DNA of 64,000 nucleotides from IMGVR_UViG_3300046616_000314:248001-312000; one strand, 5' to 3'; positions 18,228-55,320 are shown, counted from the stretch's first letter. The notes: generated by a model not told the origin, from the letters alone. Numbers and translations: made by a program.

Positions 18228-18430
18228 TGGCTACACGTCTAATCTTGGTTATGTTTGCGGCGAGTCTGGTGATGTTTGTCACCGGACTCGTTCTGCAAAT
18301 TTTTTGGAACAACGACATTCCACGTCTACTAGCTCTCGCGGGAGCCTGTGGATGGTGGATGTCAGCTAGTGCGGCTGAGAGTTTGCATCACTTACGTAGT
18401 GATGATACAGACGATAAAACCGCCGATTGA
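18224..18430 (+). CDS. Small membrane protein
   Basis: Two hydrophobic helices. Confidence 0.6.
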   Translation: MMATRLILVMFAASLVMFVTGLVLQIFWNNDIPRLLALAGACGWWMSASAAESLHHLRSDDTDDKTAD

Positions 18431-19124
18431 GTTTCTTCGTATATTCGTCGTTTAATGCCAGGAAGAAATTCTTCGGCATTTCCGGCATGAAACGTCTGGC
18501 AAAATTCCCAAAGCTTTTCAAGACTTCGGTCTTATATTCATCTTTCATGCGTGCCATAGCCGCATCAATATGAGCCACGCCTTGTTGATAGTGGGCGTTG
18601 AATTCCACCGGATTGTTGTAGTATTCTTCGGCTGTCTGACCCTTGTAGGTCTTCCCATCGGCGCCTTTGGCTGAACGTTGCTTGGCAACAGCTTCCAAGC
18701 CACGACGATAGTCGAAGAAGTGAATAATTTCGTGGATCATGGATGACCATGAAATTGAGTACGCAACGTCTACTTCATGCGAGGGGTCGTAATCGACCAT
18801 TCCAAGCACATAATATGTCGAATCTAGAAGTTGCGGATGCTTCGACATCATCAAGCCCTTGGTGCCTGGGCGTTTGGGATCATAACCAAAACCGATGTTG
18901 AGTTTCTTGAACGACGGCGAGCGCAATCCTAATACGGCGGCTGGGACCGTAAACGTGCTCACACCCTGAATGTATTCCAGATTGATTTCTGGAATTTCCC
19001 CTAGTGGAGTATCTTCGTTGTTTTCGTGAATCCACTTCGCAAACGCAGCCTCAACATGCTTAGCTTGCTTGATCGCGATCAAATCTTGCGCGGGACCTTC
19101 GGTAAGGAAATCAGATATCTTCAT
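18366..19124 (-). CDS. Putative zincin metallopeptidase (HEXXH), probable head-packaged protein
   Basis: MIHEIIHFFD and downstream YYNNPVEFNAH; N-terminus MKISDFLTE. Confidence 0.7.
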   Translation of the reverse strand: MKISDFLTEGPAQDLIAIKQAKHVEAAFAKWIHENNEDTPLGEIPEINLEYIQGVSTFTVPAAVLGLRSPSFKKLNIGFGYDPKRPGTKGLMMSKHPQLLDSTYYVLGMVDYDPSHEVDVAYSISWSSMIHEIIHFFDYRRGLEAVAKQRSAKGADGKTYKGQTAEEYYNNPVEFNAHYQQGVAHIDAAMARMKDEYKTEVLKSFGNFARRFMPEMPKNFFLALNDEYTKKLNRRFYRLYHHYVSDANSQPH

Positions 19125-19230
19125 AGATGGTCAGCACGCTATTCAAATAGGTCTTGGCTTGTTTTAGGAGTAGCATCCATAAGCCAAAGATACCTGCCGC
19201 GATACCAACACCAAGAAGAATTTGTAACAT
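19111..19230 (-). CDS. 39 aa membrane peptide
   Basis: Manual: MLQILLGVGIAAGIFGLWMLLLKQAKTYLNSVLTIYEDI; fills the gap between neighbours. Confidence 0.55.
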   Translation of the reverse strand: MLQILLGVGIAAGIFGLWMLLLKQAKTYLNSVLTIYEDI

Positions 19231-19231
19231 A

Positions 19232-19774
19232 CTAAACCTCAAACTTGGCATCAGTGTCTAAGTTATATTTAGGCTTAGGTGCTTCAATTTCGGACCAATA
19301 CTCAATCTCGCCACGCGCGTATACGCGAGTATTAAAGATCGTTGCTTCTTCAACCGATTTCACGGCGCGACCATCATCCGCTCTCACAAACAAATGCCCG
19401 GTTTTCGGATTGAAACGCAATTCTACACCGTCCAGGGATGGGTCTGTATGGCTCAGAGAGCCCGCTACAGCCGCCATAGGAAATTTGGCATGTCCGTTCA
19501 CGATGGACACTCTAGCGGTCTGGTTGACCACGAAATAGGCTTCTGTGAGGGTGACTGCGATGTCGTACCCTACTGCCTTCGCGGTTGGCGATCCATTCGC
19601 GTGAACTGTTTGGAGAAAATAAAATTTTTCATCTTTTTCGATGCGAGAATTCAAATTTAGCCGAACAGCAACATGGGTTCCTGTAGCCAAATCTCGATTA
19701 TGAAAAAGTTTCTTGCGTAAGCGTGATGCAACCACACGGGAGTTGGTCACGTCGGAATCTACAATGGGCAACAC
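19232..19774 (-). CDS. Conserved phage hypothetical protein
   Basis: VAVRLNLN, KFPMAAVAG, LRFNPKTGHLFV. Confidence 0.7.
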   Translation of the reverse strand: MLPIVDSDVTNSRVVASRLRKKLFHNRDLATGTHVAVRLNLNSRIEKDEKFYFLQTVHANGSPTAKAVGYDIAVTLTEAYFVVNQTARVSIVNGHAKFPMAAVAGSLSHTDPSLDGVELRFNPKTGHLFVRADDGRAVKSVEEATIFNTRVYARGEIEYWSEIEAPKPKYNLDTDAKFEV

Positions 19775-19789
19775 GGTAAAATACTTTCA

Positions 19790-19960: not shown

Positions 19961-19997
19961 AAATTTTTTGTACGATATTTTTTGGTAAACGACAAGG

Positions 19998-20030: not shown

Positions 20031-23000
20031 TTAGAAGTTGCCGAGTTGTCCCGGCGGTGTGAATGGTGTGACATAACGAGCCACGCCCTTTGTGATTCTG
20101 ATGTCATCCAAATAACCGTTGAGGTTAGCGGTATAGGATGCAACCGGATTACCACCTAGCAATAGCGCGCTTCCGGTTCCGCTTGGGAACGAGAATGACG
20201 ATGTTTGTGAACCGACGAGATTTCCATTCAAGTAGCAACGGAAAACGCCCGATTGTCTGACAATGGCAATGTGATGCCATGTATTAACAGGGATGCTTGC
20301 CGATGGGCTGAACGTAAACGTGCTGCCCGAACCGCTATAGAACGAGATAGCAGTTCCCGCCGAAGCAGTAGGACCGCCGACGTGTAAGCTCCAAACGCTT
20401 GCAGTGGAAACGTTTGTTGCAGCAGGCGGTGAATAGTGCAGTAGTTGTGAACGATAGTCGCCGCCGCCAGCAGCAGTCAGTGCAGTAATATTGAACCATG
20501 TTTCCATGGTGAAATCACCGGTTCCGAAATCTAGACCAGCGGTAGGGTTGGTCTGGCTTTGAGTGATAGTTTGAGTAACGGTACCTGGGAAGGATACCGA
20601 AGAGTTACCAAACTGCTTCTTAACCGTCGAGATCGATGCGCCATTGGCGGTAAAGGTACAGTTGCCAGTAGAATCGGTAAGAGTGCCTTCACCGTTTACG
20701 AGAACGCTAACGCTCGCGTATTGCGGATCATCATTCGGAAGCAATGTGAATTGTTGCGTCGGTGGTGTGAAGGTTCCGCTATAACGAGATACGCCATTGG
20801 TGATACGAAGATCGGTAATGGCTCCGTTATATCCGTAGTTCGCCGGGACTTGTTCATAACCACCAAGACCGATGCGCGCGGAGGTTTGACCCCAATCCGA
20901 TACTGTTCCGTTTGTTGAACCGACCGCGACACCATTGACCCAAAGGGTAGAAAGTGTACCCGAGCGAGTAAGAGCAATGTGAGTCCACGTGTTGAGCGGG
21001 ATAACCGGACCAACGATGCGGTCAACCGCTGATTCGCGCAGAACCAATTGTTGCGAAGCATTGACACCGATGAAGTAACCCGGTCCTGAACCGTTCGGGT
21101 TGTTGGACAGATAGAAACTATACAGACCGTTCGGTGGCGCCGCCGACGCTGGTTGAATTTGGTGAATCCACGCTTCGATGGTATAGGCGCCAGTCATTTG
21201 AGGAATGCCGCCGACATACGAGAAATTACCAAACGAGAAACCAGCCGTTGTTTGATTGCCCCACTTGCTTACCAATTGGGTCAATACACCGCCACCGCCT
21301 TGAATGGTGATAGCCTTGCCCGAAGAACGTTCGGTCAATTGTGCGCCTGGGTTGCCGATCATTGGCATCTGAACAATAGTATTCGCCAGATACGGGTCAA
21401 CGACAACGTTATATGTAACAACCGCATTTGACGTAGAAGATGCATTGGTCGCGGATACCGTGGTATTGTAAACCGTAGTATTCGATAGGAATGGCATCTT
21501 GCCTGTCAGCAACGAACCGTTGGCAATAAGACCGGTTGGTTCATTTGCCAACGTGAACGAGTTAGCATTGAACGTTGCGCTATAGTTCAAGACGGCGTTC
21601 GAATACGCTGTTGTATTGTTCAACAGGATTTGCGGAGCCGTGTTTGGTTTGTTAGGCAACGGTTGTGTCGGCGGTGTGAAGTTCGCTGTATAGCGACCAA
21701 CGCCCTTCGTATAGCGGAAGTCATTGGTGAAACCAACGTGACCAGCGGACGCGGCTTGACCTTCATAACCACCAACTGTCAGTCGTTGTGTGCTGGGGCA
21801 GAACGTTCCAACGTATACTTGGCTCGTACCGATCAAGTTACCATTCATGAAGAAATAGCTGGTGCCCGCAACACGTGACCATGCAAGGTGGACCCATTGA
21901 TTCAGCGGGAAGGTAACGCCAGCGCCGCCACCGATAATGTAATCGGTCGTCGGAACGTAGAAGCGCAATTGACCAGCCAAGTTAGTATACATCAGTGTAT
22001 CGTTTGCAGTAGTAGTAGTGTAGGAGCCAAAGAACGCATCATATGCTGTAGCATACGCGGTTTTGTAGAACCAACCTTCAACAGTGAAGTTACCGGGTGA
22101 AGACAGTACGCCACCAGTATTGGTAACGAATGCATAGTTGTTAGCCAATGTTTGGAACGACTGTGTTCCCCACTTGCTTTGTGTTGCAGACAACACCGGA
22201 GTACCGGTTGTGGTAACGGACTTACCAGTAAGTTCGGCTGGGACAGTTCCAACAGTACCGTACATCGGCATCATAGCAACGACGTTAGCATAATAGGTGT
22301 CGAGAATTTCCGAATCGACCGCTTGGAAATTAATAACACGGTCGGTGTAGAATACGTCAGCAAGAGCGCGAACCGTTACGTTAGCAGTAGCCGCAGTAGT
22401 ATTTGCGAATGTTACAGCCATTGTACCGGTAGTGCTGTTAATTGTAGCAACGCCCGGCGGCGTGCTTGAAGCAATCGTATAGGTGATCGCAGCCGAAGTA
22501 TCAACCGATGTCGCGGCAATAGTCTTTTGAATAACCGAGTTTGCGTAACCAACCGCAGTATTAGCCGAAGGAGTATTCGTAAAGATCGGGTTCTTGATGA
22601 TACCACCCAAGCGACCTGGGGGAGTGAAGTTCGTAGTATAACGAGCATTGCCGTTAGTAATACGAGCATCATCCATGAAGCCGTTGTACGGAGAAGTCCA
22701 GCTAGTTACGTTAATTCCACCAAACTGAATGAAACCGTTGGGCGGGAAATACATAGAAGCCGTAGGACCGGTGAATGCATTGGTTGTGGTTCCAACGTTT
22801 ACGCCGTTGAGGAAGTGCAACATATTTGCACCGCTACGAACGAACGCAACGTGATGCCATGTGTTCAACGGGAATGTCGCTTCGGAGAACGTAGCCGCCG
22901 TATTGAGCATCGCCGCGCCACTATTGGATTGGTCACGGGCTTGGAAACCCAGACCGCTAACACCGGTAGCAGTACCGCTTAGGTAGAAGCCCATTGCGTT

Positions 23001-30857: not shown

Positions 30858-30892
30858 GGCTGTCCTCTCTAGCAATACCAACTTGTATAGCA

Positions 30893-30899
30893 ATAAATA
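30893..30899 (+). promoter_or_regulatory. T4-like late promoter, 5 nt before ATG
   Basis: ATAAATA-acact-ATG, no SD. Confidence 0.6.
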
Positions 30900-30904
30900 A
30901 CACT

Positions 30905-31720
30905 ATGTGCAACGATATTCGCAAACATCTTAATTTATTTGAGAACGTAGAGTTTTTGGAAGAGACCAAAGCCGCTCAATATAATCTCAAAGCTCGTTAC
31001 GACGAATTCAATCAGAAATTCTTCAACAACGAATTGCCTGAAATTCCCCTGAAATTCGGTACCCTAAAGAATTCCGGCGGCGTTGTGAAATTCAAGGTGA
31101 GCCGCGTCGGTCCCAAGCCAACTGCACGAACTATTCGTTATGGTCTAAACACACCCAATACGACGACTACGTTGATCCCCGGTACATTGACGATGGTTAT
31201 CTCGGATGCCTATCAGCGTAGTGAAGCCGAATTTGACGGTTTGTTGTTGCATGAAATGATCCATGTCTATTTTGCTCATACTGGAAAGTATTATGAGAGC
31301 CATGGTCCATTGTTCATGAAAATGTTACGAGAGTTATCGCAACGTAGTGGAATGGATATTCCTCTGACCGATGACACCAGCACGGCTTTACTCTCAAACG
31401 ATGCCGTCAAACCTGTTGGTGTTGTGATTGTTGAAAAGAAGTCGGGTGGTTTCTCGTTTGCGATGTATAATCCGAACGTTCTCACCACAAAAATTGAAGA
31501 ATTCAAAGCAGTATGGGAACGTTACAATCCAAGTTATGCAAAGGAAGTCCGTGCATACTTGGTGACGGGACCAGCTTGGACGAGAATGGCAATGGAAGTC
31601 CCGGTTGGGCGCCTTCCTAAGAAAGGTAATTTTTACCGGCTAGACGACGAAGACAAAGAAAAATTGTTCGCTGAAATAGCAGAGCATGGCGAAGTGGTCG
31701 CAGAACTTAAAATATCATAA
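30905..31720 (+). CDS. SprT-like zinc metallopeptidase
   Basis: YDEFNQKFFNNELP...LLLHEMIHVY...HGPLF. Confidence 0.85.
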   Translation: MCNDIRKHLNLFENVEFLEETKAAQYNLKARYDEFNQKFFNNELPEIPLKFGTLKNSGGVVKFKVSRVGPKPTARTIRYGLNTPNTTTTLIPGTLTMVISDAYQRSEAEFDGLLLHEMIHVYFAHTGKYYESHGPLFMKMLRELSQRSGMDIPLTDDTSTALLSNDAVKPVGVVIVEKKSGGFSFAMYNPNVLTTKIEEFKAVWERYNPSYAKEVRAYLVTGPAWTRMAMEVPVGRLPKKGNFYRLDDEDKEKLFAEIAEHGEVVAELKIS

Positions 31721-31889: not shown

Positions 31890-34793
31890 CTACATGATCC
31901 AAATTTTTCCAGTAGCTTCCTCAAGCAACTCATCGAAGGCTTGCTTGACCTGATTCGGTAATTCCGACCAAAGGTGTTGAGCCGCAGCACGTCTCTCAGG
32001 ATCGGTTGTCAAATCCATGCCTTCGTCAAAGTGATCCGGCAACGGGTTCAGAGTAATTTTTCCAGTAATGATATACTGCGCAAAGCTTTCGTGAATCCAT
32101 TCAGATGCCGTGACCAGTTTATTCGACCGCGCCGAACGCATAGTACCCAAATAATGACCCATCATCTTAGTATAGATTTCATGGTGATCATGATAAATGA
32201 TATGTCCATACTGTGTATCTTGATCTGGCCACTCGTGATCATAGCCAATTTCCAAGATGTTATGGACAAAATTTTCAAAGACATAGGCTGCACTATAGGA
32301 CGACGCTAGCTTGTTACGTCCACTGATCAGAGTATGCGCCATTCGGTGAGCAATGATCCATGGGCTACGCAAGCTGATGTAGTCTTGATCCGACATATTG
32401 CTTCCGAGGATCATCGTAATATGGTTCGGATTTGCCTTGCTCAAATATTCATAGGCTTCCTTACCGAGTTTCTTTTGAACCCATTCCAAATCTACGTAAC
32501 CCTTTTGTGTCGTGGGATCATAGTCGGGATTGGTCGATTGCCAAAAATACATATCGAATGTGAATAGGGTTTTCATGAAAGCATTTTGGGCTTTCTTGAT
32601 TACGCCAGGATCACGCATGGCTTTCTTATCGACGGCTGACCAGTGTGGAGCTTCCATTTCGTAGCCAGTGAATTTCGACATCATTTCTTTTTCATTGGAG
32701 TCGAAATTCGGATCAACCTGCCAATCACCAATCGGGGCTTCGGTTAAACCAGCACCAAATTGATGAATGTCTTGTAATTTCCAAGTTTCGTGATCTTTAA
32801 AATATACTTGCCATCCCTTCAAGAATTTTTGAAGATACGGATTATTAATCAAATTATCCGATGATTGATACTTAGAATAAAATTCTAGTTCTAGATTACT
32901 TCCTCGCCAACCCAAGCTAATACAGTTTACCAATCCTTGAACATTAAAATGTGTTTTAAGATCATGATGAGTAGCATTGGCTGCATCCCATGCAATAATA
33001 CCATCTGGCATTACAAACATTCGAACCCAACCAAAATTTTGCAATAAACGTTCTAATTCGCCGTGAGAACCAATCTTATAAGTTTGCAAGTTAGAATTTT
33101 TCAGTTCCACTTTATCGAATGGAGCTTCGTCCAGAATTTCTTCCTCTATCGGTTCAGACGCCGTGATCAATTCTGTTAAGTTACCGAAGTATCTAATGAA
33201 TTTTGCTTGCTTGTCGGGAGATTCGATACCGTATTCGTTCTCGCCCATGACGATAACAAACAATCCAAGCGACGTTTTCCAAACTTCTCCTGCACCCGCC
33301 CAATCATTGCTTTCAAGCATTTCATCTGAATTCGTAGCTGCAATAAAGGGTTCCCAACGGTTGGACGCGGAGACATACAGCGCGTCACGCGCGTCCGCGT
33401 GCGAACTGTCCATGGCATCCCACATATAGATGTCCCCGGTGGAAGCATCATAGGCGCCCCGAATACCAGACGTTGCCGAATTCAACAGAGATTGGAATTC
33501 ACCACGGGTCGGATCGATGAAAAATTTTACGTTATTATTCCAAACCGAAGTCTCTTCGAAACGTTCGGTCAACTCGTCATCGGTCTCTTCATCTTCGTCA
33601 TCAAGCATCGTCCAATCGCCATAGATATCTTGGTCATAGTAATCGACTTCGATTTCTGGGAAATTGTTGACTAGCCAATCGCAACCGTGCGCCAATTCGG
33701 CGCCAACTTTATCACTATGCCACCAGATTGTGTTCAGTGAAGCATCTGTGACCGTGAGCATGATCGGTTGACCAAATTTGGTGCTATAAGCGTAAACTGG
33801 AATAGCATCCTTTGGAAGATTCAATTCCGCATGAACTGTGTTGTGGACAGCATCATAGGCAGACCATGCATAAAAATCTTTCCCAACGGCATAGCCGCGC
33901 GCCATCTGGTGTTTGCCTAAGCATTCCCGCCATTCTTTGGAATTGGGATTGATAAAGACGGTGACGATATGTTCTTTGCGCGGACCATATTGCGGCTTGA
34001 AAGCGTGGGCAAAGGCTTCCTTGACCGGCTCTGGATCGGAATGAACGGGTTGTTCGGGGAAATCCAGAACATCCGAGTAGTGCGCCTTGAAGTCTACGAC
34101 CGCGTGACCATTGCGACCAATGGCGTTGAATTTTACATTCGGTGGTAGCGTGATAGGCGCACGCCGACGCTTGCCCCAAGATGCTTTATACCCTTCGTTT
34201 CCGTAGACGGTTCCTGCCATGATATCGAACAAAAGTTCTTGGTCATCGCGCGTAGTTGATTGAATATTGCTGAAGGGCTCATCATCCCAATCGACCTGCG
34301 ACGGGTGCATTGTTACGTCTACGTGACGCATTTCTACGGAAATACTTGTGACATATTTCCAAATATTTGTCAGATCACCGATCAAAAACTCTTCGGATTC
34401 ATCCGACGAGACATCGCGCATACCAAGTGTACCCGCAATGGTGTCGATAGGTTCACGATAGGTTTGGTTACGCGGTTTGTTGCGATATGGCGCATAGCGC
34501 ATCGGAACAACCTTATGATTGTGCTTCAGACGTTGCAGGCTGAAGCCGATACGCCAAGCCTTGATCCCGCCTCTAGCGTAGGTATCTTGGATATCGAAGA
34601 ATGCATTGCGGGTAAGGCTGACGCCCTGGACAGTGGCATCATTGATCGTGTGGGGTGTTCGCCCGGTGATCGTCTGTGTCTTGAAAATCATCCGCAGAGC
34701 ATCAGCCGTAGTCCAGTGATAGACTTGTTGATCTGGTGCATTGACTAGTTCGTCAATACGGTCTTCGTTTAATAGGTCCATAAGGTCGCGCAT
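31890..34793 (-). CDS. Multi-domain late protein: ART-like N-domain, three internal repeats, zincin-like C-domain
   Basis: Start MRDLMDLLNE 5 nt after CATAAATA; VYHWT..GVSLTR..ESEE; repeats ending (A/M)WxAxxxxH; SPWIIAHRMAH...HESFAQY. Confidence 0.8.
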   Translation of the reverse strand: MRDLMDLLNEDRIDELVNAPDQQVYHWTTADALRMIFKTQTITGRTPHTINDATVQGVSLTRNAFFDIQDTYARGGIKAWRIGFSLQRLKHNHKVVPMRYAPYRNKPRNQTYREPIDTIAGTLGMRDVSSDESEEFLIGDLTNIWKYVTSISVEMRHVDVTMHPSQVDWDDEPFSNIQSTTRDDQELLFDIMAGTVYGNEGYKASWGKRRRAPITLPPNVKFNAIGRNGHAVVDFKAHYSDVLDFPEQPVHSDPEPVKEAFAHAFKPQYGPRKEHIVTVFINPNSKEWRECLGKHQMARGYAVGKDFYAWSAYDAVHNTVHAELNLPKDAIPVYAYSTKFGQPIMLTVTDASLNTIWWHSDKVGAELAHGCDWLVNNFPEIEVDYYDQDIYGDWTMLDDEDEETDDELTERFEETSVWNNNVKFFIDPTRGEFQSLLNSATSGIRGAYDASTGDIYMWDAMDSSHADARDALYVSASNRWEPFIAATNSDEMLESNDWAGAGEVWKTSLGLFVIVMGENEYGIESPDKQAKFIRYFGNLTELITASEPIEEEILDEAPFDKVELKNSNLQTYKIGSHGELERLLQNFGWVRMFVMPDGIIAWDAANATHHDLKTHFNVQGLVNCISLGWRGSNLELEFYSKYQSSDNLINNPYLQKFLKGWQVYFKDHETWKLQDIHQFGAGLTEAPIGDWQVDPNFDSNEKEMMSKFTGYEMEAPHWSAVDKKAMRDPGVIKKAQNAFMKTLFTFDMYFWQSTNPDYDPTTQKGYVDLEWVQKKLGKEAYEYLSKANPNHITMILGSNMSDQDYISLRSPWIIAHRMAHTLISGRNKLASSYSAAYVFENFVHNILEIGYDHEWPDQDTQYGHIIYHDHHEIYTKMMGHYLGTMRSARSNKLVTASEWIHESFAQYIITGKITLNPLPDHFDEGMDLTTDPERRAAAQHLWSELPNQVKQAFDELLEEATGKIWIM

Positions 34794-34861
34794 ACGGTTA
34801 TTTATGGCTTGACATTTGGTAGTGTTTTGGTACGGTCCCAATAATTGTTTGGAGATATCTT

Positions 34862-44604: not shown

Positions 44605-44639
44605 CGCCATATACCATATTGGGCTATAAATAGTTCAGT

Positions 44640-44912
44640 ATGAAAAATGAAAAATTGATGGTAGAAAATTCGTTCTACCAAGCGTGCGCCGACCTTCTAG
44701 GGGTCTCGTACGATTATTCGCCCTATCCGTTCTCGCGTCGTACGCGCTGGAATAATCGCGCCCCTGGCAACGGTCGTTTCCCCGACCACGGGCTCATCCG
44801 TATGCACGGACCCAATCTCATCAATGTTAGTTTGAAGAATCCCCGTATGTCGGGGTTCTATTACAGCGTTGAATCTGCCTTAGACGCTATCAAGAAAGCA
44901 CTGAAAAAGTGA
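44640..44912 (+). CDS. Conserved phage hypothetical protein
   Basis: RTRWNNRAPGNGRFPDHGLIR; TTGACG...TATAAA upstream. Confidence 0.75.
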   Translation: MKNEKLMVENSFYQACADLLGVSYDYSPYPFSRRTRWNNRAPGNGRFPDHGLIRMHGPNLINVSLKNPRMSGFYYSVESALDAIKKALKK

Positions 44913-45196
44913 TCAACTCTCAAGAAGATATCGAACAAGATCGCAAAGAAATCGCCTTTGCCCTGGCTGAAGCTGGTGTGAACGTTGCGGCTTTTGAGCC
45001 CGGTACGTTTGGCTATCATGAGATTGTTAATACATCCTCGTTGATCTTGGATTTGATCGCTACTCTGCTAGAACATCCTGCTACCGCAAACGATCCCGAA
45101 GCCTTCCGTATGGTCCATAAAGCTCATGGTGCTTTGTTTGAAGCCTATACTTATATGGGCGAAAAACATTTGCCGGAAAATCCAGAGCGCGACTAA
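44909..45196 (+). CDS. Hypothetical protein
   Basis: FEPGTFGYHE motif. Confidence 0.7.
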   Translation: MINSQEDIEQDRKEIAFALAEAGVNVAAFEPGTFGYHEIVNTSSLILDLIATLLEHPATANDPEAFRMVHKAHGALFEAYTYMGEKHLPENPERD

Positions 45197-45204
45197 ATAC
45201 TGTC

Positions 45205-45534
45205 ATGCGCGAATTGATGGATATTTTGGGTGACGTACAGGCTGACAACGCATACGATGCGGTCGCCACCATCTTGCGTAAGGTGTTTGGTAAGCCGTAC
45301 AATCCTGAAATGATGCGATATAACGGCGGGGGTTCGGCAGTTAGTCAAACAATTTGGGGCAATCATGGATTGACCTATCGGTTGGAACGCCTAGGTTTTG
45401 TGCGTGGCGCCGGTGAACCGGCTACAGACGGTGATTATTCACTGAGTGTATTCCGTCATCCTGACGGAACATCCGTCAAGATTTGGCATCGTTCCTATGG
45501 CACACGTTTCAGTGTTTTGCTCACACACAATTAA
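45205..45534 (+). CDS. Late small protein
   Basis: CTAAATA (45193-45199) 5 nt before ATG; starts MRELMDIL. Confidence 0.7.
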   Translation: MRELMDILGDVQADNAYDAVATILRKVFGKPYNPEMMRYNGGGSAVSQTIWGNHGLTYRLERLGFVRGAGEPATDGDYSLSVFRHPDGTSVKIWHRSYGTRFSVLLTHN

Positions 45535-45577
45535 CACCATAAATACACTAATAGCCTAATTCTAGGAGTGTATTTTC

Positions 45578-46777
45578 ATGCGACAGTGGATTAACATAGT
45601 CGAACACCGGGAACCCATCAACGAACTATTTGATGATTCGCCATCGTTGACCGCTATTCCTGACGCTGAACTTCCGCATTCGGGGCTCCCGCAATTACCC
45701 AGTGTGCCGACACTTAAGGCTTATAAATTTAAGGTAGGGTCGGAACGCTATGCGGTCTGGTTCATAAAACATTCCGATGCCGTGGAATGTCTATTTGCTA
45801 AATTCGTCCCGGCTCCGAACGGCACACAAACCATTTCATTTGAGCTAACACCGTCAGCAAGTGCCGTACAGGTGTTCTCCGCTGTCATGGTAGCCATCAA
45901 CACGTTCTGTTCGACGGTTAGACCTGAAACGATTGTATTCCCTGGTTGGAATGCAAGACAGAGCAATTTCTATAAGCGTCTAGCTCGTTATGCCGACAAG
46001 ACCGGTGTCTTGTCGAATGCGTATGAACTGTACACGCATGAACTTGACGGCAAAGAAATAACTGCGATCCGAAAGAAAGTTACGCCCAAGGCTTTCGAAG
46101 ACATCAGCGAAGATGTCTCGCCTGGGTTTAAGGCATGGTTCGGGGATAGCAAGGTGGTTGACGAACACGGCAACCCTCTAAAAGTTTATCACGGCACGAA
46201 TCAGCCGCTCACTAAATTTTCTAAAGATCGTGGCGGTGCCGCCACTGGTCCTCGCCACGGCGCGGCGCATGGTTTCTTCTTTACAAAATCGCCAGTTGTT
46301 GCATCAATGTATGCGGTTCATGCTGGCACTACGAATATTGCGGGTATGGAAGACCACGAACAAAAATCAGCACAATATCAAAAAGAAATTGCTGCTGCTG
46401 AGCGCAAAGGTGATTGGGATCGCTACGAACAACTCATGAGCGATTACGAAGATCACGAAATCAATGCAACTCGGGAAGACCCAATTCACGGTCAAAACGT
46501 AATTCCGGCGTATCTGTCTTTACAGCATCCTAAAATTTTAAATTATCAAGGTGGAAGTGGTGGTACATTTAGTGTTCATGGCGATTTGGATGTGGTTATT
46601 GATCAAGCCAAAGCCGAAGGCTACGATGGTTTGATTATGCTCAATGTCGATGATACTCCTAGCGATTCCGTCGTTACGGATCACTACGTTGCATTTAGCC
46701 CGAAGCAAATCAAATCGGTGTTCAACGGAAGCTTCAATCCGAACAGCGATCACATTAGCGAGACTTCACGAAAATAA
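45578..46777 (+). CDS. Protein with C-terminal ART-PolyVal-like ADP-ribosyltransferase domain
   Basis: FKAWFGDSKVVDEHGNPLKVYHGT, GFFFT, VIPAYLSL, GYDG, YVAFSPKQIKS; CATAAATA promoter and AGGAG RBS. Confidence 0.8.
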   Translation: MRQWINIVEHREPINELFDDSPSLTAIPDAELPHSGLPQLPSVPTLKAYKFKVGSERYAVWFIKHSDAVECLFAKFVPAPNGTQTISFELTPSASAVQVFSAVMVAINTFCSTVRPETIVFPGWNARQSNFYKRLARYADKTGVLSNAYELYTHELDGKEITAIRKKVTPKAFEDISEDVSPGFKAWFGDSKVVDEHGNPLKVYHGTNQPLTKFSKDRGGAATGPRHGAAHGFFFTKSPVVASMYAVHAGTTNIAGMEDHEQKSAQYQKEIAAAERKGDWDRYEQLMSDYEDHEINATREDPIHGQNVIPAYLSLQHPKILNYQGGSGGTFSVHGDLDVVIDQAKAEGYDGLIMLNVDDTPSDSVVTDHYVAFSPKQIKSVFNGSFNPNSDHISETSRK

Positions 46778-47614: not shown

Positions 47615-47631
47615 GTCAAAATGAGTGCGCT

Positions 47632-50036: not shown

Positions 50037-50080
50037 ATTCCTGTTATATTACAATAGAATATGAGCATTGGATTGAGTGC

Positions 50081-50491
50081 GTGGAATTAGACAAGCTTGA
50101 GTTGCATGGGTCGAACAAGCAAGAAATTCTTGCCTTGTTCAACGCCGTCTCGAATGAAGATAGCGATTGGCTTGTGACCAAGACCTATGCCCGAACGGTG
50201 CGTGACATCAGCGGAACCAAGATTTACGTTCGGTGTAATTTCAACGCTCAGAACAAAGTGACAGAAGTTTCAATCGGTGGTGAGAATGGTTGGATGATGC
50301 GTTTCCAACTTCGTCTTCGTCCCACAGGTATGACCAAGGATTACATTAGAGCAAGTCTATGGTTGTGCGACGGCGAAGAGACGGGATTGGCGACTTATAT
50401 TCTCTATGATCCGCTCTTGATGAGTCCCGGTGTGTTTCAAGAGGATATGGTAACGCTTCGGCTGTTCGCTACAAAATGGATGCCGCAATGA
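50081..50491 (+). CDS. Hypothetical protein, paralogue family B
   Basis: GTG start; ENGWMMRF..., tail FQEDMVTLRLFATKW. Confidence 0.7.
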   Translation: MELDKLELHGSNKQEILALFNAVSNEDSDWLVTKTYARTVRDISGTKIYVRCNFNAQNKVTEVSIGGENGWMMRFQLRLRPTGMTKDYIRASLWLCDGEETGLATYILYDPLLMSPGVFQEDMVTLRLFATKWMPQ

Positions 50492-50548
50492 ACCAGACGC
50501 AGAAAGGCGCGTTTTAGCCCTCGGGTTTATGAGACCAATGGGAAAAGT

Positions 50549-50917: not shown

Positions 50918-50938
50918 TTCTACGCGCCTAAATAATGG

Positions 50939-52867
50939 ATGCGTTATCGTGACATTATCAAGGAAAATGGTGGACTCGTTGTCCCTGGTGTGAACACCAC
51001 TCCTGACGTTCAGCCAGGAGAGATCGCGCGCCAAGCCGCCAAGCTTGGTTTCAAAGTTGACGCCAACGGATTGCCGCCCATCTGGACGGGTCACGATGCC
51101 TCTACGGGCGCCAAGGACACCCCTAACAAGGGCGAAGCGTTCTATAAGAAGAATGGTGCCCGCCCCAACAAAAAAGCCCCTAAGCTCAAGAAAAACGTGT
51201 CCGAAAGCGTACTCGTTGAGAGCTTGCGCGGTTGGTTTTGGAATGCAAACACTGGGGAAACTTTAGACATCCCCGGAACCCAAATGATGCACGTTGAGTA
51301 CATCAAGGGTTATCCAGAAAATTTTGGCTTGTCGATTGCAGACGTTAAAGACGTAAATCTACGTAACTCGATTGAAGCTGGCAAATTACTACACATGGTA
51401 TTGGCGATGGGCTGGATTCGTTGCGCGAATTCCTTCTCCGGTCACACCGCATTTTTGAACGCAGCTTCGAAGCGTTACGCCAATATGGCAATCAAACATT
51501 TTGCTAAGATGTTTACCGAGCTAGTGGTTGAGATCACCGAGAACGGTGAAGCCCCTGGTGGAGGCGTTAGCTTCCGATTGAAAGACCCCATGGCGGTGCG
51601 TCAATTCCTTCGTACGGGTGTAACCGGTGAAGAATGGATTGACGATCAGCTTTCCGCTCTAACCGAAGCTCGCCGGAATCCTGAACAGAATAGAGGCGAA
51701 CGAAATCAAGGCTTCGGAGCCGCCCTAAAGAACTATATCGGACCCGATAGCTTCATCAGCTTTACAATGATTGACAAGGTTGGCGCCAACCCGCGCACGC
51801 AATTTTCTACGCCCATAGGCATCTATACCTATCCGCTTGACGAAGAAACTTGGCAAGACGTGATGGATGACGATATTCCGTTCGCTGGGGATTTGAAATA
51901 CATCAACATTATCAAGTCCAGAGCTTCGAAAGTCATGGACAGCGCGAATTACGCACAAGGCGATATGGTCAGCAATGAAATCAAATTGCGCGAATGCTTA
52001 CTAGACTATTGGATGGAAGACCCGGATGGCATCTATCAATTCTTGAAGGATGCTCAGACTTCGGCATTCCGAAAGAAGAATTCTCCTTTCATGGCGATGA
52101 CATGGAATCAAACACGCTGGGTAGCCATGGCAATTAGCACGGCTCGTAAGAACAAAACTCTTGACCCGGAAAAACGTTTGACACTCGTTGACGTTGCGAA
52201 TCATGTAGCTAAAGAATATGACGACAACTGGAACAGTAATCCGCAGTTGTGGAATCACGTTCTATCCAATGTTCTCGGATACGATATGATCTTGGATCGA
52301 GGCGCGGGTATCATTCACAGTAATGAACCTAAGCAAGCACTGTTCTTGAAGCTCTCTGCTTTACAGTTGATGGAGCGCAAGATCAATCCAAACTGGAATG
52401 AAGATGCAAAGACGGAAAAGAAAATCACTATGGGTTATTTGCCCTTACTGATCGGAACAGAGCGTCTTCCAATCAATAAGATTTTCTGGGGGATCAATAC
52501 TGCCATCGCCAATAAGCGTGCTTATGACAATGATCAGGATATGCATAACGCCTTGGGCGGCAAGTACATAGTAACAATAAAAGACGATTTCAATAGTGAT
52601 TTCAAAGTCTTTGTAACTAATCTTCTAAATCATGTTGATGTCTCTAAGCTGAACGTAGGGCAAGCCAAAAGTTTGAATATTGGAATATATGAAATGTTCA
52701 AACATGCTGACGCAATCCGATCATTACCTCATGATATGGTTGTCGGTCTATGTGTGATGCTTAAGAAAGCAACTACTATACACCACGGACAACGAATCGC
52801 GCTTCCTGAATACATTCGTGGTTTCATAACGCCCGAAGAAGTCGAGAATATCAATGCTAATTACTGA
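50939..52867 (+). CDS. Multi-domain late protein (probable head-packaged) with C-terminal ART-like domain
   Basis: CTAAATA 4 nt before ATG; MRYRDIIKE; VPGVNTTPDV module; after LTEA: SFTMIDKVGANP..TPIGIYTYP...LGYDMILD..IIHSNEP.QALF. Confidence 0.8.
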   Translation: MRYRDIIKENGGLVVPGVNTTPDVQPGEIARQAAKLGFKVDANGLPPIWTGHDASTGAKDTPNKGEAFYKKNGARPNKKAPKLKKNVSESVLVESLRGWFWNANTGETLDIPGTQMMHVEYIKGYPENFGLSIADVKDVNLRNSIEAGKLLHMVLAMGWIRCANSFSGHTAFLNAASKRYANMAIKHFAKMFTELVVEITENGEAPGGGVSFRLKDPMAVRQFLRTGVTGEEWIDDQLSALTEARRNPEQNRGERNQGFGAALKNYIGPDSFISFTMIDKVGANPRTQFSTPIGIYTYPLDEETWQDVMDDDIPFAGDLKYINIIKSRASKVMDSANYAQGDMVSNEIKLRECLLDYWMEDPDGIYQFLKDAQTSAFRKKNSPFMAMTWNQTRWVAMAISTARKNKTLDPEKRLTLVDVANHVAKEYDDNWNSNPQLWNHVLSNVLGYDMILDRGAGIIHSNEPKQALFLKLSALQLMERKINPNWNEDAKTEKKITMGYLPLLIGTERLPINKIFWGINTAIANKRAYDNDQDMHNALGGKYIVTIKDDFNSDFKVFVTNLLNHVDVSKLNVGQAKSLNIGIYEMFKHADAIRSLPHDMVVGLCVMLKKATTIHHGQRIALPEYIRGFITPEEVENINANY

Positions 52868-54056
52868 ATTGTTTGAAGCACGTTCTAACCCAACGCAGAA
52901 CAAAGACAACCGAGCTTCGGATGTTTCTGAATATTTGCGCGGTCTAGACTACGAAACTGGCGAACTGTTTATGAGTTTTACTCAAATCGATAAAGTTGGC
53001 ATGAACCCGCAATCGACTTACAACACGCCACTAGGTGTGTATTGCTATCCGATCAATCGCCACACTATCGAAGATTACGACAACAACAGTCTTCCATTTG
53101 CGGGCGATGCCAAGTTCGTGAACATTATCAAGTCACGCGGTAGTCAACTGAATGTTCAGGACTATGGCGATGATGATCTAGCCGACGACTCCAAGCGGTT
53201 GACCAGATATCTACTTAAGATTTTTCCCGAAAATGAAAATGAGATTGATCAAATTCATGCGCTAGCCGTACAGGATGCCAAGAATGGTACTCATGGCAAG
53301 AAAACGGCGGCTTCTTATATCTGGAATTACACTCGCTGGGCAGCTTACTTGCTGGACATCAAAGACCCGAAGGCAATCATTCGTAAGATGTCGGGATTTG
53401 ATTCTACCACACCAAGCAAGACAGCCGCGACTTGGAATGCCGTCCTGCGTAAGGTGCTAGGATATGATTCGGTAGTCGATAACGGCTGGGGCATCATTCA
53501 CGAAAACGAACCGACACAGGCGGTGTTCTTGGATGTTCGTGGTTTCCAGTTAGTATCGCGCCGCGTGAACACCAATTGGTCAGGTCGCCTCCTGAAGAAA
53601 ATTAATCTGAGTACAGTTCCGTGGTTGTGGAAGAATAACAATATCGCTTTCCGTTCCATCCTCGCGGCTTTGGAAATTTTTATTACTAAGGCGCCCGTAG
53701 TGCTCAATCGCAAATATGAAGTGAACCGAGACAAACTTCGACAGGAAGTTCCAGGGTATTTTGCGGCATTGCGATCAGTGATAAGATACACGCATGTCAC
53801 TATGCAGGAAGCTAGTTATATCGCTCATGGTATCATGAGTCATATCCGCAATGGTGGTATCTTGGAACATCTGAACCAAGACGAACGATTGGAACTGTTG
53901 GAGTGGTGGCTACCATTTTTCCAAAAAGGCTTTTCTACCCAAACCGATTTGGCTAGCAATGAAACGTTCAAGAGAGATTACATGAACGTATTTGTTCACG
54001 TCCTAGACGACGCACATTATGCTAAATTTGAGGAATTTGTGGCTAATTATGGATAA
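52854..54056 (+). CDS. Paralogue of the C-terminal domain of 50939-52867
   Basis: MLITELFEARSNP; SFTQIDKVGMNP..TPLGVYCYP...LGYDSVVD..IIHENEP.QAVF. Confidence 0.8.
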   Translation: MLITELFEARSNPTQNKDNRASDVSEYLRGLDYETGELFMSFTQIDKVGMNPQSTYNTPLGVYCYPINRHTIEDYDNNSLPFAGDAKFVNIIKSRGSQLNVQDYGDDDLADDSKRLTRYLLKIFPENENEIDQIHALAVQDAKNGTHGKKTAASYIWNYTRWAAYLLDIKDPKAIIRKMSGFDSTTPSKTAATWNAVLRKVLGYDSVVDNGWGIIHENEPTQAVFLDVRGFQLVSRRVNTNWSGRLLKKINLSTVPWLWKNNNIAFRSILAALEIFITKAPVVLNRKYEVNRDKLRQEVPGYFAALRSVIRYTHVTMQEASYIAHGIMSHIRNGGILEHLNQDERLELLEWWLPFFQKGFSTQTDLASNETFKRDYMNVFVHVLDDAHYAKFEEFVANYG

Positions 54057-55320
54057 TACATTTGCAGTAATGTCGGCTGATGAATTTAGAGAATTTATCA
54101 ACCGCACGCGCGAGATCAATTCAGACCTAGCACCGGGGCATGACAATTTCCACACGGATCGAATCAAGTACGTCTATCCTTTGGATAAGAATGAGCATTT
54201 GGTTGTGCTCAACGGTGATCACATTATTGCTATGGCAGGCGTTGAAACCAATCCGTATGACCATGAACAGCTTTGGATTAAGTATGTAAGCGTTGACCCA
54301 GAATATCGCGGTCAAGGTCTAGGGCGTTTCCTTCTAGAAAAGGTTTTCCAATACGCGGTCGCCCATGGTCAGAAGGTCAAGAATAGCAGCTTCACCGAAC
54401 TAGGCGCCGAACGTCTCAAGCATCTGCACCCGGAATTCGAGAAGAAATATCCACAAGCTGCATTCGCCCGAAACGAACAGGGTAAGTACGTAAACTCTCG
54501 CGGTCAGGTCATGGAAGAATGCAACTTCACGCTTGAGCGCGAAGCGGCGAGCCATCTACCTACGGAATGGCTGAACGAAGCATCGACCGAAACCCCGGAT
54601 GCCCCAACGGTCGATACGACCAAGGATGGTCAGACGATCACCTTTGAGCGTTTCAAGGATATCGAAGGCAATAAGAATCGCGGCTGGCGCGTAGACAAAA
54701 TCGAAGCCAAGATCGGTAACGAGTTAGTGGGCTACATTAAGATTTCGTATATTCCGAAGACTCGCTTCAGACAATATTACAAGAGTGTCTTCAATTTTGC
54801 TCATCAGATGCTAGGTCAGACTGTCTTTCCATTCGGAAAAGAAACTGCCTCACTAGAAAGCTTGAATAACAAAGAATTGTTTGACGCACTCTACCGTGTA
54901 TACAGAGAAAAGAGTTACAGTTTAGCCGAGCAACTAGACCCTAAGATGCCACGCAAGCAAGTTATGCTTTTGCTTAAGAAGCAAGAGTTGGCGTGGATGA
55001 ACGATGAAACTAACGAACCGTATGGTGAGAAATTCAAGAAGTTCTATCGCTACCACGTTGATAAGCCGATGGTCGATGCGATTCGCGTCGAAGATGGTAG
55101 CGGATCATTGGGTACCGCCGGTAAGCCGTCACATTTGCGTAGAGGAATCGGGCGCAAGCTCTATGCCGCCGCGTCAGAATGGATGCAAGAACGCGGTCTA
55201 CGACTACACGCATCGGGTTGCCAGACGAACGATGCCAAGGCGTGCTGGACAAAGTTTGATTCTGAAGGCGGCGTTAAGAGCGATGCCGATGGACGCCGTT
55301 ATATCGATTTCATGAAATAA
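54049..55320 (+). CDS. Tandem GNAT acetyltransferase-domain protein
   Basis: Motif A twice: VSVDPEYRGQGLG and HLRRGIGRKLY...SGCQTNDAKACW. Confidence 0.8.
   Translation: MDNTFAVMSADEFREFINRTREINSDLAPGHDNFHTDRIKYVYPLDKNEHLVVLNGDHIIAMAGVETNPYDHEQLWIKYVSVDPEYRGQGLGRFLLEKVFQYAVAHGQKVKNSSFTELGAERLKHLHPEFEKKYPQAAFARNEQGKYVNSRGQVMEECNFTLEREAASHLPTEWLNEASTETPDAPTVDTTKDGQTITFERFKDIEGNKNRGWRVDKIEAKIGNELVGYIKISYIPKTRFRQYYKSVFNFAHQMLGQTVFPFGKETASLESLNNKELFDALYRVYREKSYSLAEQLDPKMPRKQVMLLLKKQELAWMNDETNEPYGEKFKKFYRYHVDKPMVDAIRVEDGSGSLGTAGKPSHLRRGIGRKLYAAASEWMQERGLRLHASGCQTNDAKACWTKFDSEGGVKSDADGRRYIDFMK

What the first reader, a model, noticed from the sequence alone, without database searches (positions are those of the whole stretch)
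18366..55320. Probable head-packaged effector arsenal: late genes sharing a T4 capsid-targeting-like N-terminus
Seen: scattered genes begin with a similar short leader ending in a hydrophobic-x(-x)-E: MKISDFLTE (18366-19124), MCNDIRKHLNLFE (30905), MRDLMDLLNE (34793), MRQWINIVE (45578), MRYRDIIKE (50939), MLITELFE (52854); MRELMDIL (45205) has the leader without the E. Internal (I/L)xE-A sites lie at apparent domain borders (ILDEA, GLTEA, ALTEA, WLNEA). Five of the seven sit behind TAAATA late promoters. Payloads are ART-like domains (four), zincin/SprT peptidases (three), and a co-transcribed tandem GNAT. Known: T4 internal proteins carry a capsid-targeting sequence (MKTYQEFIAE) removed by gp21 cleavage after I/L-x-E, and T4 Alt is an injected ART. 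Polyvalent proteins of phages and plasmids combine ART, zincin and GNAT domains. Inference: a distributed, protease-matured enzyme cocktail injected with the DNA for host takeover or anti-defence.
Basis: partly seen in the sequence, partly recalled or inferred. Interest (0 to 1): 0.8.

Follow-up and report, generated by a model that had tools for sequence, protein, structure and literature searches.

The report
Head-targeting leader on huge-phage effector genes
A 561-kb uncultivated phage puts a short N-terminal tag, very like the one phage T4 uses to load proteins into its head, on many late genes for enzyme-like proteins, so its probable injected protein cargo can be read from sequence alone.

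Summary
Read as a loose motif ([IL]xE in the first 13 residues), it is near chance: 14 of 71 genes against about 8.6 expected. A specific leader, M-[RK]-x(2-3)-[DE]-Phi-Phi-(x)-E, is not chance. Six window genes match two post-hoc patterns against about 0.2 expected.

The same leader heads the homologues of at least five unrelated families, and GNAT proteins in a related phage. It recurs as the junction between domains in fusion proteins. It resembles T4's capsid-targeting sequences: MKTYQEFIAE|AR in T4, and T4 Alt MELITELFDE against MLITELFEA here.

One payload family lies inside T4-type head modules (portal, gp21 protease, gp23) in about 20 other phage contigs. TAAATA lies 4-5 nt before the ATG of most leader genes (p = 3e-5), implying late, leaderless mRNAs.

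Payload calls hold only in part. ART-PolyVal, SprT and the tandem GNAT are confirmed. Two genes are ART-like by fold only. One HExxH family has no known fold. The fourth ART and the third zincin are unsupported.

Packaging, cleavage and injection remain inferred. No gp21 homologue could be reached in this genome.

The parts
18366..19124 (-). 252-aa protein. Leader MKISDFLTE (nt 19098-19124) followed by an HExxH family ('family B'; HEIIH at nt 18720-18734).
   Evidence: 232 homologues were found. Most close ones start M-[RK]-x-x-[ED]-[LI]-[FI]-E followed by [GDS][AP]xxD[LI]. In longer fusions the junction before the domain keeps Phi-x-E. H131, E132, H135 and E174 are invariant. The AF2 model has pLDDT 89, with residues 1-6 below 50, and no PDB fold match.
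30894..30899 (+). TAAATA, 5 nt before the ATG of the SprT gene.
30905..31720 (+). 271-aa SprT-like zincin (HEMIH) with an atypical 13-20 residue N-terminal extension (MCNDIRKHLNLFE...).
   Evidence: Pfam SprT-like, E 1.2e-8, residues 30-147. The syntenic homologue in L007 reads TAAATA+4, then MRYSELFE, then the SprT domain from residue 15.
31890..34793 (-). 967-aa modular protein. Leader MRDLMDLLNE (34764-34793); domain C (34017-34763); three ~130-150-aa repeats (33564-34016, 33126-33563, 32739-33125); C-domain (31893-32738). Every border carries Phi-x-E: VKE|A, LTE|R, LDE|A, LTE|A.
   Evidence: Domain C exists as stand-alone ~290-aa proteins starting MLLTELF / MRANEIY / MRLDELF. There is no Pfam or PDB hit.
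34799..34804 (-). TAAATA, 5 nt before the ATG at 34793.
44640..44912 (+). Possible further member: a 90-aa protein starting MKNEKLMVE (compare T4 gp22 MLKEQLIAE), behind TATAAATA (44625-44632, 7 nt before the ATG).
   Evidence: It matches no regex and has no Pfam hit. Weak.
45194..45199 (+). TAAATA, 5 nt before the ATG at 45205.
45205..45534 (+). 109-aa protein with leader MRELMDILGD. It has the same spacing as the T4 CTS but ends in Asp, not Glu.
   Evidence: No family hit.
45540..45545 (+). TAAATA, 32 nt before the ATG at 45578, with an AGGAG Shine-Dalgarno sequence in between.
45578..46777 (+). 399-aa protein. Leader MRQWINIVE; N-domain (45605-46111); ISE|D junction (46103-46111); ART-PolyVal domain (46112-46762); conserved tail FNPNSDHISE|TSRK.
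   Evidence: Pfam ART-PolyVal, E 1.5e-18. Short homologues are leader plus ART only (MRNFIDIITE, MREFITLIES, MRKYIDILNE). Their leader Phi-x-E aligns with the window's internal ISE. In P0130 the tail motif becomes the linker ITE|ARRNPEQNPK to a family A domain.
50929..50934 (+). TAAATA, 4 nt before the ATG at 50939. Probable promoter of the 50939-52854-54049 operon.
50939..52867 (+). 642-aa protein. Leader MRYRDIIKE; N-domain (50966-51667); LTE|ARRNPEQN junction (51659-51667); family A domain (51668-52864).
   Evidence: The junction aligns with the N-terminal leader of the paralogue and of about 70 homologues. The N-domain exists as a stand-alone 147-aa leader protein in a 415-kb phage contig (L059).
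52854..54056 (+). 400-aa family A protein with leader MLITELFE|ARSNP. It overlaps the stop of 50939.
   Evidence: 6 of 7 residues match the T4 Alt N-terminus MELITELFDE. 69 of 89 homologues carry the leader. In the AF2 model the core has pLDDT above 90 and residues 1-11 are below 50. Foldseek gives ART-PolyVal-like models at probability 0.97-0.98.
54049..55320 (+). 423-aa tandem GNAT, translationally coupled to 52854. It has no N-terminal leader. LNE|A (54571-54579) lies between the two GNAT halves.
   Evidence: Pfam Acetyltransf_1, E 1e-20, two stretches. The JGI gene call starts at 54049. A single-domain GNAT with leader MRKLMMIVEG exists in the 520-kb relative L006.

Best explanation
These genes encode cargo for the phage head.

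A short amphipathic N-terminal leader, M-[RK]-x(2-3)-[DE]-Phi-Phi-(x)-E, works like the T4 capsid-targeting sequence. It docks the protein onto the prohead core. A gp21-type prohead protease then cuts after the Glu of Phi-x-E. That cut removes the leader and, in multi-domain proteins, separates the modules at the Phi-x-E|[A/R] junctions.

The genes are transcribed late from T4-like late promoters ([C/A]TAAATA). These are often placed so that the mRNA starts at the AUG and is therefore leaderless.

The matured enzymes would leave with the DNA and act on the host at the start of the next infection. They comprise an ART-PolyVal ADP-ribosyltransferase, a large ART-like 'family A', SprT-like and HExxH proteins, and GNATs.

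Shown: the motif, its conservation across families, its reuse as a junction, its promoter association, and the head-module context of family A in other phages. Inferred: binding to the core, cleavage, encapsidation, ejection and the host targets.
For: 1. Specific leader enrichment in the window: 6 genes against about 0.2 expected.

2. The leader is conserved in homologues of unrelated families.
- Family A: 69 of 89.
- Short ART-PolyVal proteins.
- The HExxH family B.
- Family C.
- SprT in L007 and GNAT in L006.

3. The same Phi-x-E[AR] is the junction in fusions: P0130, P0099, window 50939, the window ART protein, and family B fusions.

4. Similarity to T4.
- IPII/IPIII are MKTYQEFIAE|A[RS], and P0052 reads MRATEFIAEARRNP.
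- Alt is MELITELFDE, and the window has MLITELFEA.
- gp22 is MLKEQLIAE|A, gp24 is MAKINELLRE|S, and the gp23 site is FLTE|A.
- Alt is cut at ITE-6 and LTE-619 by gp21 (PMC5694885).
- The IPs share only the CTS (PMC3012670).

5. P3 is L/I/V/F as in T4, not S/A/G as in phiKZ and SPN3US.

6. Family A lies within 10 kb of T4-type gp20, gp21, gp22 or gp23 in about 20 of 71 IMG/VR loci. It often lies between portal and protease or right after gp23.

7. In the T4-like contig L002, three adjacent genes start MLSYKE[YF]L.E. One of them has a different body.

8. TAAATA association has p = 3e-5. Of 36 TAAATA+0-9-ATG ORFs in huge-phage loci, 15 match the strict leader pattern and about 8 more are leader-like by eye.

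9. AF2 leaves the leader unstructured and unpacked in both models.

10. The same genome has at least five more leader-bearing family A paralogues elsewhere.
Against: - There is no proteomic or experimental evidence.
- No gp21-type protease, gp23 or portal was found in the window or in about 45 kb more of the same contig. Its T4 affinity rests on a gp30.3-family gene, RNA ligase and PNK, the late-promoter-like motif, and relatives.
- The GNAT gene lacks a leader, the SprT leader is atypical, and the 45205 leader ends in Asp.
- A Glu about 10 residues before the WFGxSKVVD motif also occurs in classical polyvalent proteins without any leader (Tunturi_5: TLE|TPAF, ATE|TPQF). That junction may therefore be domain-intrinsic.
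- The family A homologue in the 735-kb phage LR756501 has no leader.
- The two regexes were defined after seeing the data.
Confidence: 0.62

Rival explanations
1. The leader does target the prohead, but the proteins are assembly or core components like T4 gp67, gp68 and gp22. They would be degraded or kept for head building, not injected as effectors.
For: Family A sits where T4 encodes gp67 and gp68, between portal and protease. T4 core proteins carry similar N-termini. Paralogue expansion resembles the inner-body proteins of giant phages (PMC5694885). The best PDB fold hit is a podophage pre-ejectosome chain, but with a weak TM-score.
Against: The payloads are enzyme families typical of injected polyvalent proteins: ART-PolyVal, SprT and GNAT (PMC5512222). 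Family A and family B have invariant catalytic-looking His, Glu and Asp residues. The proteins are 250-970 aa and have only a few Phi-x-E sites, whereas gp22 is riddled with them.
Confidence: 0.15
2. The shared N-terminus reflects expression, not sorting. It would be a codon or peptide context favoured by leaderless late mRNAs (ATG-CGN...) with no role in localisation.
For: Most leader genes have TAAATA 4-5 nt before the ATG and begin ATGCG.
Against: The leader also occurs with 24-32 nt 5' UTRs carrying Shine-Dalgarno sequences (45578, L039, L059) and on the internally coupled gene 52854. The same peptide recurs inside proteins at domain borders. Conservation is at the amino-acid level over 8-10 residues and across GC contents. 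T4 uses a normal 5' UTR with the same peptide.
Confidence: 0.08
3. The motif is the first helix or N-cap of each domain (domain-intrinsic), or a chance resemblance.
For: A Glu precedes the ART-PolyVal domain even in leaderless polyvalent proteins. The loose [IL]xE motif is near chance.
Against: At least five unrelated folds share the motif. AF2 gives it pLDDT below 50 and leaves it detached from the domain. The upstream M-[RK]-x-x-[DE]-Phi part is N-terminus-specific and is lost at internal junctions. Enrichment is about 30-fold or more over the internal rate.
Confidence: 0.05

Closest known systems
T4 internal proteins IPI/IPII/IPIII and Alt (capsid-targeting sequence plus gp21 processing)
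   Same: A leader of about 10 residues with the same spacing (M-K/R-x-Phi-x-D/E-Phi-Phi-x-E). Cleavage-type motif L/I-x-E followed by A. Unrelated payloads sharing only the leader. A late promoter of the TATAAATA type. An ADP-ribosyltransferase among the cargo. Alt is also trimmed at a C-terminal LTE site, as the ISE tail of the window's ART protein suggests.
   Different: The payload families are unrelated to the IPs or to Alt (Alt is an R-S-E ART; here the ART is ART-PolyVal). There are many more genes per genome, scattered over a 561-kb genome. Multi-module proteins carry internal sites. The spacing implies leaderless mRNA. Nothing has been shown experimentally.
Polyvalent proteins of phages and conjugative elements (Iyer et al. 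2017, PMC5512222)
   Same: The same domain vocabulary (ART-PolyVal, zincin-like peptidases, GNAT) and the same predicted role: delivery with the DNA and early action in the host.
   Different: Classical polyvalent proteins are single giant polypeptides next to or fused with portal or MuF genes, and they lack this leader (Mx1 1479 aa, Tunturi_5 gp321). Here the domains are mostly split into separate genes, each with its own leader, or joined by Phi-x-E junctions.
Inner-body and ejection proteins of phiKZ and SPN3US giant phages
   Same: Many head-internal paralogues processed by a gp21-related prohead protease. N-terminal propeptides serve for incorporation.
   Different: Those propeptides are 100 or more residues long and are cut at S/A/G-x-E. 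Here the leaders are 8-14 residues with L/I/V/F at P3, the T4 type.

Membership tests
T4-type CTS-bearing head-internal proteins | N-terminal leader of 10-20 residues resembling the T4 CTS | tested here: met
   Direct comparison with T4 IPI-III, Alt, gp22 and gp24 read from AF158101. The spacing is identical in MRDLMDLLNE and MRELMDILGD. LITELF is shared with Alt.
T4-type CTS-bearing head-internal proteins | Leader ends in the gp21 cleavage motif (L/I)-x-E | tested here: met
   LTE, LFE, IKE, LNE and IVE in five of the six regex-matching leader genes. 45205 ends ILGD, with no Glu, and the SprT extension has LFE-13.
T4-type CTS-bearing head-internal proteins | Same genome encodes a gp21-type (S77) prohead protease and a gp22/gp23-type core and shell | not testable with these tools
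   Not in the window or in L008, L060 or L066. Two portal-based IMG/VR scans did not return this contig. The feature is met in about 20 other contigs that carry family A.
T4-type CTS-bearing head-internal proteins | Late transcription from a TATAAATA-type promoter | tested here: met
   Motif level only. TAAATA lies upstream of 5 of 7 leader genes, and two more are co-transcribed. Fisher p = 3e-5. There are no transcript data.
T4-type CTS-bearing head-internal proteins | Protein present in virions with the leader removed | not testable with these tools
   The phage is uncultivated. No homologue exists in any deposited phage genome except LR756501.
Polyvalent proteins | Two or more disparate effector domains in one polypeptide | tested here: inconclusive
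   The 967-aa protein has 5 modules, and the ART protein, 50939 and the GNAT protein have 2 each. Most modules have no assigned activity.
Polyvalent proteins | Contains signature domains such as ART-PolyVal | tested here: met
   PF18760, E 1.5e-18, in 45578-46777.
ADP-ribosyltransferase fold (family A: 50939 C-half, 52854) | ART fold with catalytic H-Y-E or R-S-E residues | tested here: inconclusive
   Foldseek against BFVD hits ART-PolyVal-like models at probability 0.97-0.98, but with TM-scores of at most 0.45. hhalign probability against ART-PolyVal is 2%. There is no PDB ART hit. The 'HGT' His is replaced (FVSFT).
ADP-ribosyltransferase fold (N-domain of the 967-aa protein) | Detectable similarity to ART families | tested here: not met
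   No Pfam hit, no PDB hit, and hhalign probability 0.1%. Only a YHWT motif is suggestive.
Zincin metallopeptidase (18366 family) | HExxH on a helix plus a third ligand; zincin fold | tested here: inconclusive
   HExxH and E174 are invariant. There is no Pfam or PDB sequence hit. A confident model (pLDDT 89) has no PDB fold match.
SprT-like zincin (30905) | Pfam SprT-like above the gathering score, with HExxH | tested here: met
   35.2 bits against a cutoff of 25.6; HEMIH is present.
GNAT acetyltransferase (54049) | Pfam GNAT domains | tested here: met
   Acetyltransf_1, 74.5 bits, two stretches.

The most novel reading that the evidence does not exclude
A portable cassette defines the whole head-delivered proteome of a clade of 400-560-kb T4-related phages. 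The cassette is a T4-like late promoter placed for leaderless translation plus a leader peptide of about 9 residues ending in Phi-x-E. There would be dozens of effectors per genome, several from families with no known fold or function (family A, family B, family C and the repeat module). Multi-module proteins would be cut into separate enzymes by the prohead protease. If so, injected effector repertoires of uncultivated phages could be listed from sequence alone.
Probability: 0.5. Interest if true: 0.78.

Novelty: new variant of a known kind. Interest (0 to 1): 0.68.

Why it matters
Proteins that a phage injects with its DNA act before any phage gene is expressed, so they are prime candidates for host takeover and counter-defence. 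They are normally found only by virion proteomics of cultivated phages.

Here a sequence signature appears to mark them in huge uncultivated phages and in many T4-type environmental phages. It points to several widespread, uncharacterised enzyme-like families as head cargo. It also suggests that the T4 CTS/gp21 system is an old and general sorting device, and that polyvalent proteins and arrays of single-domain proteins are two packagings of the same arsenal.

Tried and rejected
- Megablast of 10 kb and tblastn of three payload proteins against deposited phages gave nothing, or only LR756501.
- BLASTP of T4 Alt against the window proteins matched only the N-terminal heptapeptide.
- The Alt N-domain against the window ART N-domain showed no similarity.
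- hhalign of family A or family C against ART-PolyVal was not significant.
- Profile searches of families A, B and C against PDB sequences found nothing.
- Foldseek of family B against the PDB found nothing.
- The Foldseek PDB hit of family A to a cyanophage A4 pre-ejectosome chain (E 5e-4, TM 0.27/0.12) was kept only as a weak lead.
- Two IMG/VR scans with T4-type portal queries, meant to reach the head module of the 561-kb contig, returned other phages only.
- One look-up of a left-edge gene was not on record.
- No tRNA or Rfam family occurs in the window.
- The reading of the 967-aa C-domain as a zincin was rejected, because it has HRMAH, not HExxH.
Full report
**What the window is.** The 64-kb window is about positions 248,001-312,000 of a 561,116-bp metagenomic phage contig. 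Its names are JGI 3300046616 Ga0495668_0000005 and IMGVR_UViG_3300046616_000314. No deposited phage is close at the DNA level.

The window encodes two giant Ig-repeat proteins, translation-related genes, a NAD salvage cluster, a T4 gp30.3-family gene, and many small genes. No head or tail core gene is in the window.

A narrower leader is far from chance. One pattern (M-[RK..]-x-x-[DEN]-Phi-Phi-(x)-[ED]) matches 18366, 50939 and 52854 against 0.19 expected. The other (M-[RK]-x-Phi-Phi-x-Phi-Phi-(x)-[ED]) matches 34793, 45205 and 45578 against 0.004 expected. Both patterns were written after seeing homologues and T4, so the exact p-values are soft.

A position matrix trained only on non-window homologues also separates three window genes from all others (16.0, 11.7 and 9.4 against 3.4). 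One of them, the N-terminus of 50939, belongs to a domain unrelated to the training families.

**The leader is a module shared by unrelated proteins.**

- Family A comprises the 52854 protein and the C-terminal 400 residues of 50939. It has 91 detectable relatives, all unnamed. 69 of 89 start M-[RK]-x-x-[ED]-[LI]-x-E-A-R-[KR]-N-P. R10 is invariant and E8 nearly so.
- Short ART-PolyVal proteins close to the 45578 gene are just leader plus domain: MRNFIDIITE, MREFITLIES, MRKYIDILNE, MRFFEIISE.
- The HExxH family of 18366 has 232 relatives. Close ones start MKLDDLFEG, MRYHEIVEG, MKTKELFEA and similar.
- The N-domain of the 967-aa protein exists as stand-alone ~290-aa proteins starting MLLTELF, MRANEIY or MRLDELF.
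- In a syntenic relative (L007: giant ORF, then SprT), the SprT gene really starts MRYSELFE, 4 nt after TAAATA. The public gene call had missed this start.
- A 520-kb relative (L006) has six leader genes in about 9 kb (locus positions 10001-19481). They include two ART-PolyVal genes and a GNAT (MRKLMMIVEG).
- Other parts of the window's own genome hold at least five more family A paralogues with canonical leaders, e.g. MRAYEILEARRNPEQNPK.

Both AF2 models leave the first 6-11 residues at pLDDT below 50 and outside the fold.

**The same motif marks domain borders.**

- In 50939 the sequence LSALTE|ARRNPEQN aligns column for column with the N-terminal leader of the next gene and of the family.
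- In the window's ART protein, DISE|DVSPGFKAWFG aligns with the leader end of the short ARTs.
- P0130 is ART-PolyVal, then NITE|ARRNPEQNPK, then family A. P0099 joins a DUF3990 domain to ART-PolyVal through VTE|AR.
- Longer family B proteins keep Phi-x-E immediately before the domain.
- The 967-aa protein reads leader, domain C, VKE|A, repeat 1, LTE|R, repeat 2, LDE|A, repeat 3, LTE|A, C-domain.
- The tail of the ART-PolyVal domain, FNPNSxxI[ST]E, is conserved. It is followed either by a stop within five residues or by another domain.

One caution applies. Classical polyvalent proteins without any leader also have a Glu about 10 residues before WFGxSKVVD. That particular junction may therefore be partly domain-intrinsic.

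**Comparison with T4.** The following N-termini and sites were read from the T4 record.

| T4 protein | N-terminus or site |
|---|---|
| IPII, IPIII | MKTYQEFIAE\|A[RS] |
| IPI | MKTFKEF...ITE\|A |
| Alt | MELITELFDE |
| gp22 | MLKEQLIAE\|A |
| gp24 | MAKINELLRE\|S |
| gp23 maturation site | FLTE\|A |

Family A member P0052 starts MRATEFIAEARRNP, and the window's 52854 starts MLITELFEA. MRDLMDLLNE and MRELMDILGD have exactly the CTS spacing.

Published work bears on three points.

- Alt loses six residues at ITE-6 and 63 residues at LTE-619 through gp21. The CTS is 10-20 residues long. Giant phiKZ-type phages instead use long propeptides cut at S/A/G-x-E (PMC5694885).
- The T-even internal proteins share only the CTS (PMC3012670).
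- Here P3 is L, I, V or F, which is the T4 type.

**Genomic context elsewhere.** Family A occurs in T4-superfamily contigs. L002 (165 kb) has it among the terminase, sheath, gp19-like tube, baseplate and gp32 genes. Three adjacent genes there start MLSYKE[YF]L.E, and one of them has a different body. L004 has a T4 portal nearby.

An IMG/VR scan returned 71 loci. Local tblastn with T4 gp19-gp24 found T4-type portal, gp21 protease, gp22 or gp23 within 10 kb of family A in about 20 of them. In some the gene lies directly after gp23 (L083) or after the portal (L030, L032). In others it lies between portal and protease (L038, L039, L080, L081), where T4 has the core genes 67 and 68.

Leaders in those phages vary (MKLLEVLPLLE|AR, MHLIDIFE|AR, MGELRQLIQE|R), but all end in Phi-x-E.

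**Promoter association.** TAAATA is under-represented in the window (17 against 26.7 expected) and sits just before start codons.

- It lies 4-5 nt before the ATG of 30905, 34793, 45205 and 50939.
- It lies 32 nt before 45578, with a Shine-Dalgarno sequence in between.
- It also lies before both giant ORFs.
- Five of seven leader genes have it against 2 of 64 others (p = 3e-5).
- 52854 and the GNAT gene overlap their upstream genes and are probably co-transcribed.

Starting from the promoter side, 36 distinct ORFs in ten huge-phage loci have TAAATA plus 0-9 nt plus ATG. Of these, 15 fit the strict leader patterns and about eight more are visibly leader-like.

T4 alt, 22 and 24 have TATAAATA about 27-30 nt upstream of the ATG. 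From general knowledge of T4 late promoters, the motif is centred at -10. A 5-nt spacer would then put +1 on the A of ATG, giving leaderless mRNAs. This is inference; there are no transcript data.

**What the payloads are.**

| Status | Payloads |
|---|---|
| Confirmed | ART-PolyVal in 45578; SprT-like in 30905; tandem GNAT in 54049 |
| Fold-level only | Family A: confident core, with BFVD hits to ART-PolyVal-like models at probability 0.97-0.98 but low TM-scores; profile comparison insignificant; 'HGT' His replaced |
| Motif only | Family B: invariant HExxH...E but no fold match for a pLDDT-89 model, so possibly a new fold |
| Not supported | ART nature of the 967-aa N-domain; zincin nature of its C-domain |
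| Unassigned | The three repeats; the 50939 N-domain (stand-alone in L059); the 109-aa protein |

**Mechanism and rivals.** The best reading (0.62) is T4-style head targeting and prohead-protease maturation of a late-expressed set of enzymes that leave with the DNA.

The main rival (0.15) keeps the targeting but makes the proteins core or assembly components rather than effectors. An expression-only explanation tied to leaderless mRNAs (0.08) does not account for the internal junctions or for leader genes with normal 5' UTRs. Domain-intrinsic or chance explanations (0.05) are contradicted by the number of unrelated folds, the AF2 behaviour and the enrichment.

**Limits.** I could not reach the head module of this genome. 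No cultivated phage carries families A or B. The family A copy in LR756501 lacks the leader. Packaging, cleavage, ejection and host targets are all inferred.

**Novelty.** The principle is textbook T4: a CTS plus gp21 processing of diverse internal proteins, with Alt as an injected ART. Head delivery of ART, zincin and GNAT domains has also been predicted for polyvalent proteins (PMC5512222, PMC9503650).

In the papers I could search, I did not find the following described.

- The CTS-type leader on these families.
- Its use as an inter-module junction.
- Its coupling to a leaderless-type late promoter.
- The scale of the set in 400-560-kb phages.

I rate this as a new variant of a known kind.

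Noticed in passing
window 56149-61375 (-): A four-enzyme NAD+ salvage cluster lies next to the ART genes. It holds NAD synthase (CN_hydrolase + NAD_synthase), an isochorismatase/nicotinamidase-like gene, an NAPRTase, and a Nudix protein whose N-terminus looks like a nucleotidyltransferase by eye. A Macro-domain gene lies about 1.5 kb beyond the window's right edge (L008 11263-11781). It could replenish NAD+ used by the ARTs or depleted by host defence.
   Followed up: partly
window 20031-30368 (-) and 1-3117 (-): Two giant ORFs: one of 3445 aa and one of more than 1039 aa that runs off the window. They are made of He_PIG-type Ig repeats plus LamG-like modules (by eye). Both lie behind TAAATA. 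They are probably fibre or decoration proteins. A syntenic giant ORF plus SprT pair exists in L007.
   Followed up: partly
window 4496-4903, 34862-36344, 37619-38242, 39713-40000, 49193-50491, 55790-56143 (-), 63509-63826: A paralogous family of ten or more small proteins shares only a C-terminal motif, [ED][ED]Dxx[ML]FK[LM]KW[L]. There is no Pfam hit for the one tested.
   Followed up: no
window 30894-30905, 34793-34804, 45194-45205, 50929-50939; L006, L007, L011, L029, L059, L060: TAAATA sits 4-5 nt before ATG-CGN. If TAAATA is a T4-type -10 late element, these mRNAs start at the AUG and are leaderless. This would be unusual for T4-like phages.
   Followed up: partly
window 16204-17469, 17763-18227, 40636-41436, 30483-30893 (-), 13446-13748: Translation and chaperone-related genes typical of huge phages: a class II aaRS core plus anticodon-binding domain, GatB/YqeY-like domains, a ribosomal L7/L12 C-terminal domain protein, and a GroES-like gene (by eye).
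   Followed up: partly
window 61536-62090 (-): A Ros/MucR-family regulator (Pfam ROS_MUCR in the JGI annotation). This hints at an alphaproteobacterial host.
   Followed up: no
window 46838-47557 (+): A Bax1-I (BI-1/YccA) membrane protein gene lies immediately downstream of the ART gene (E 7.5e-50).
   Followed up: no
window 41841-42365 (-); L007 19726-20256 (-): A conserved Cys-rich (SWIM-like by eye) 174-aa protein with TAAATA 1-5 nt before its ATG. Its N-terminus is MMDLKRYFSDEHPPVLDEE. It belongs to the same promoter class but its leader status is unclear.
   Followed up: no
window 62411-62914 (+); L008 18334-20306: T4-family auxiliary genes: a gp30.3 homologue (E 1.9e-39), with an RNA ligase and a PNK-like gene just beyond the window. 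They support a T4-related lineage.
   Followed up: partly
L030/L032/L038 portal ORFs: T4-type portal genes of 1047-1206 aa, twice the normal length, in phages carrying family A. They probably contain inteins.
   Followed up: no
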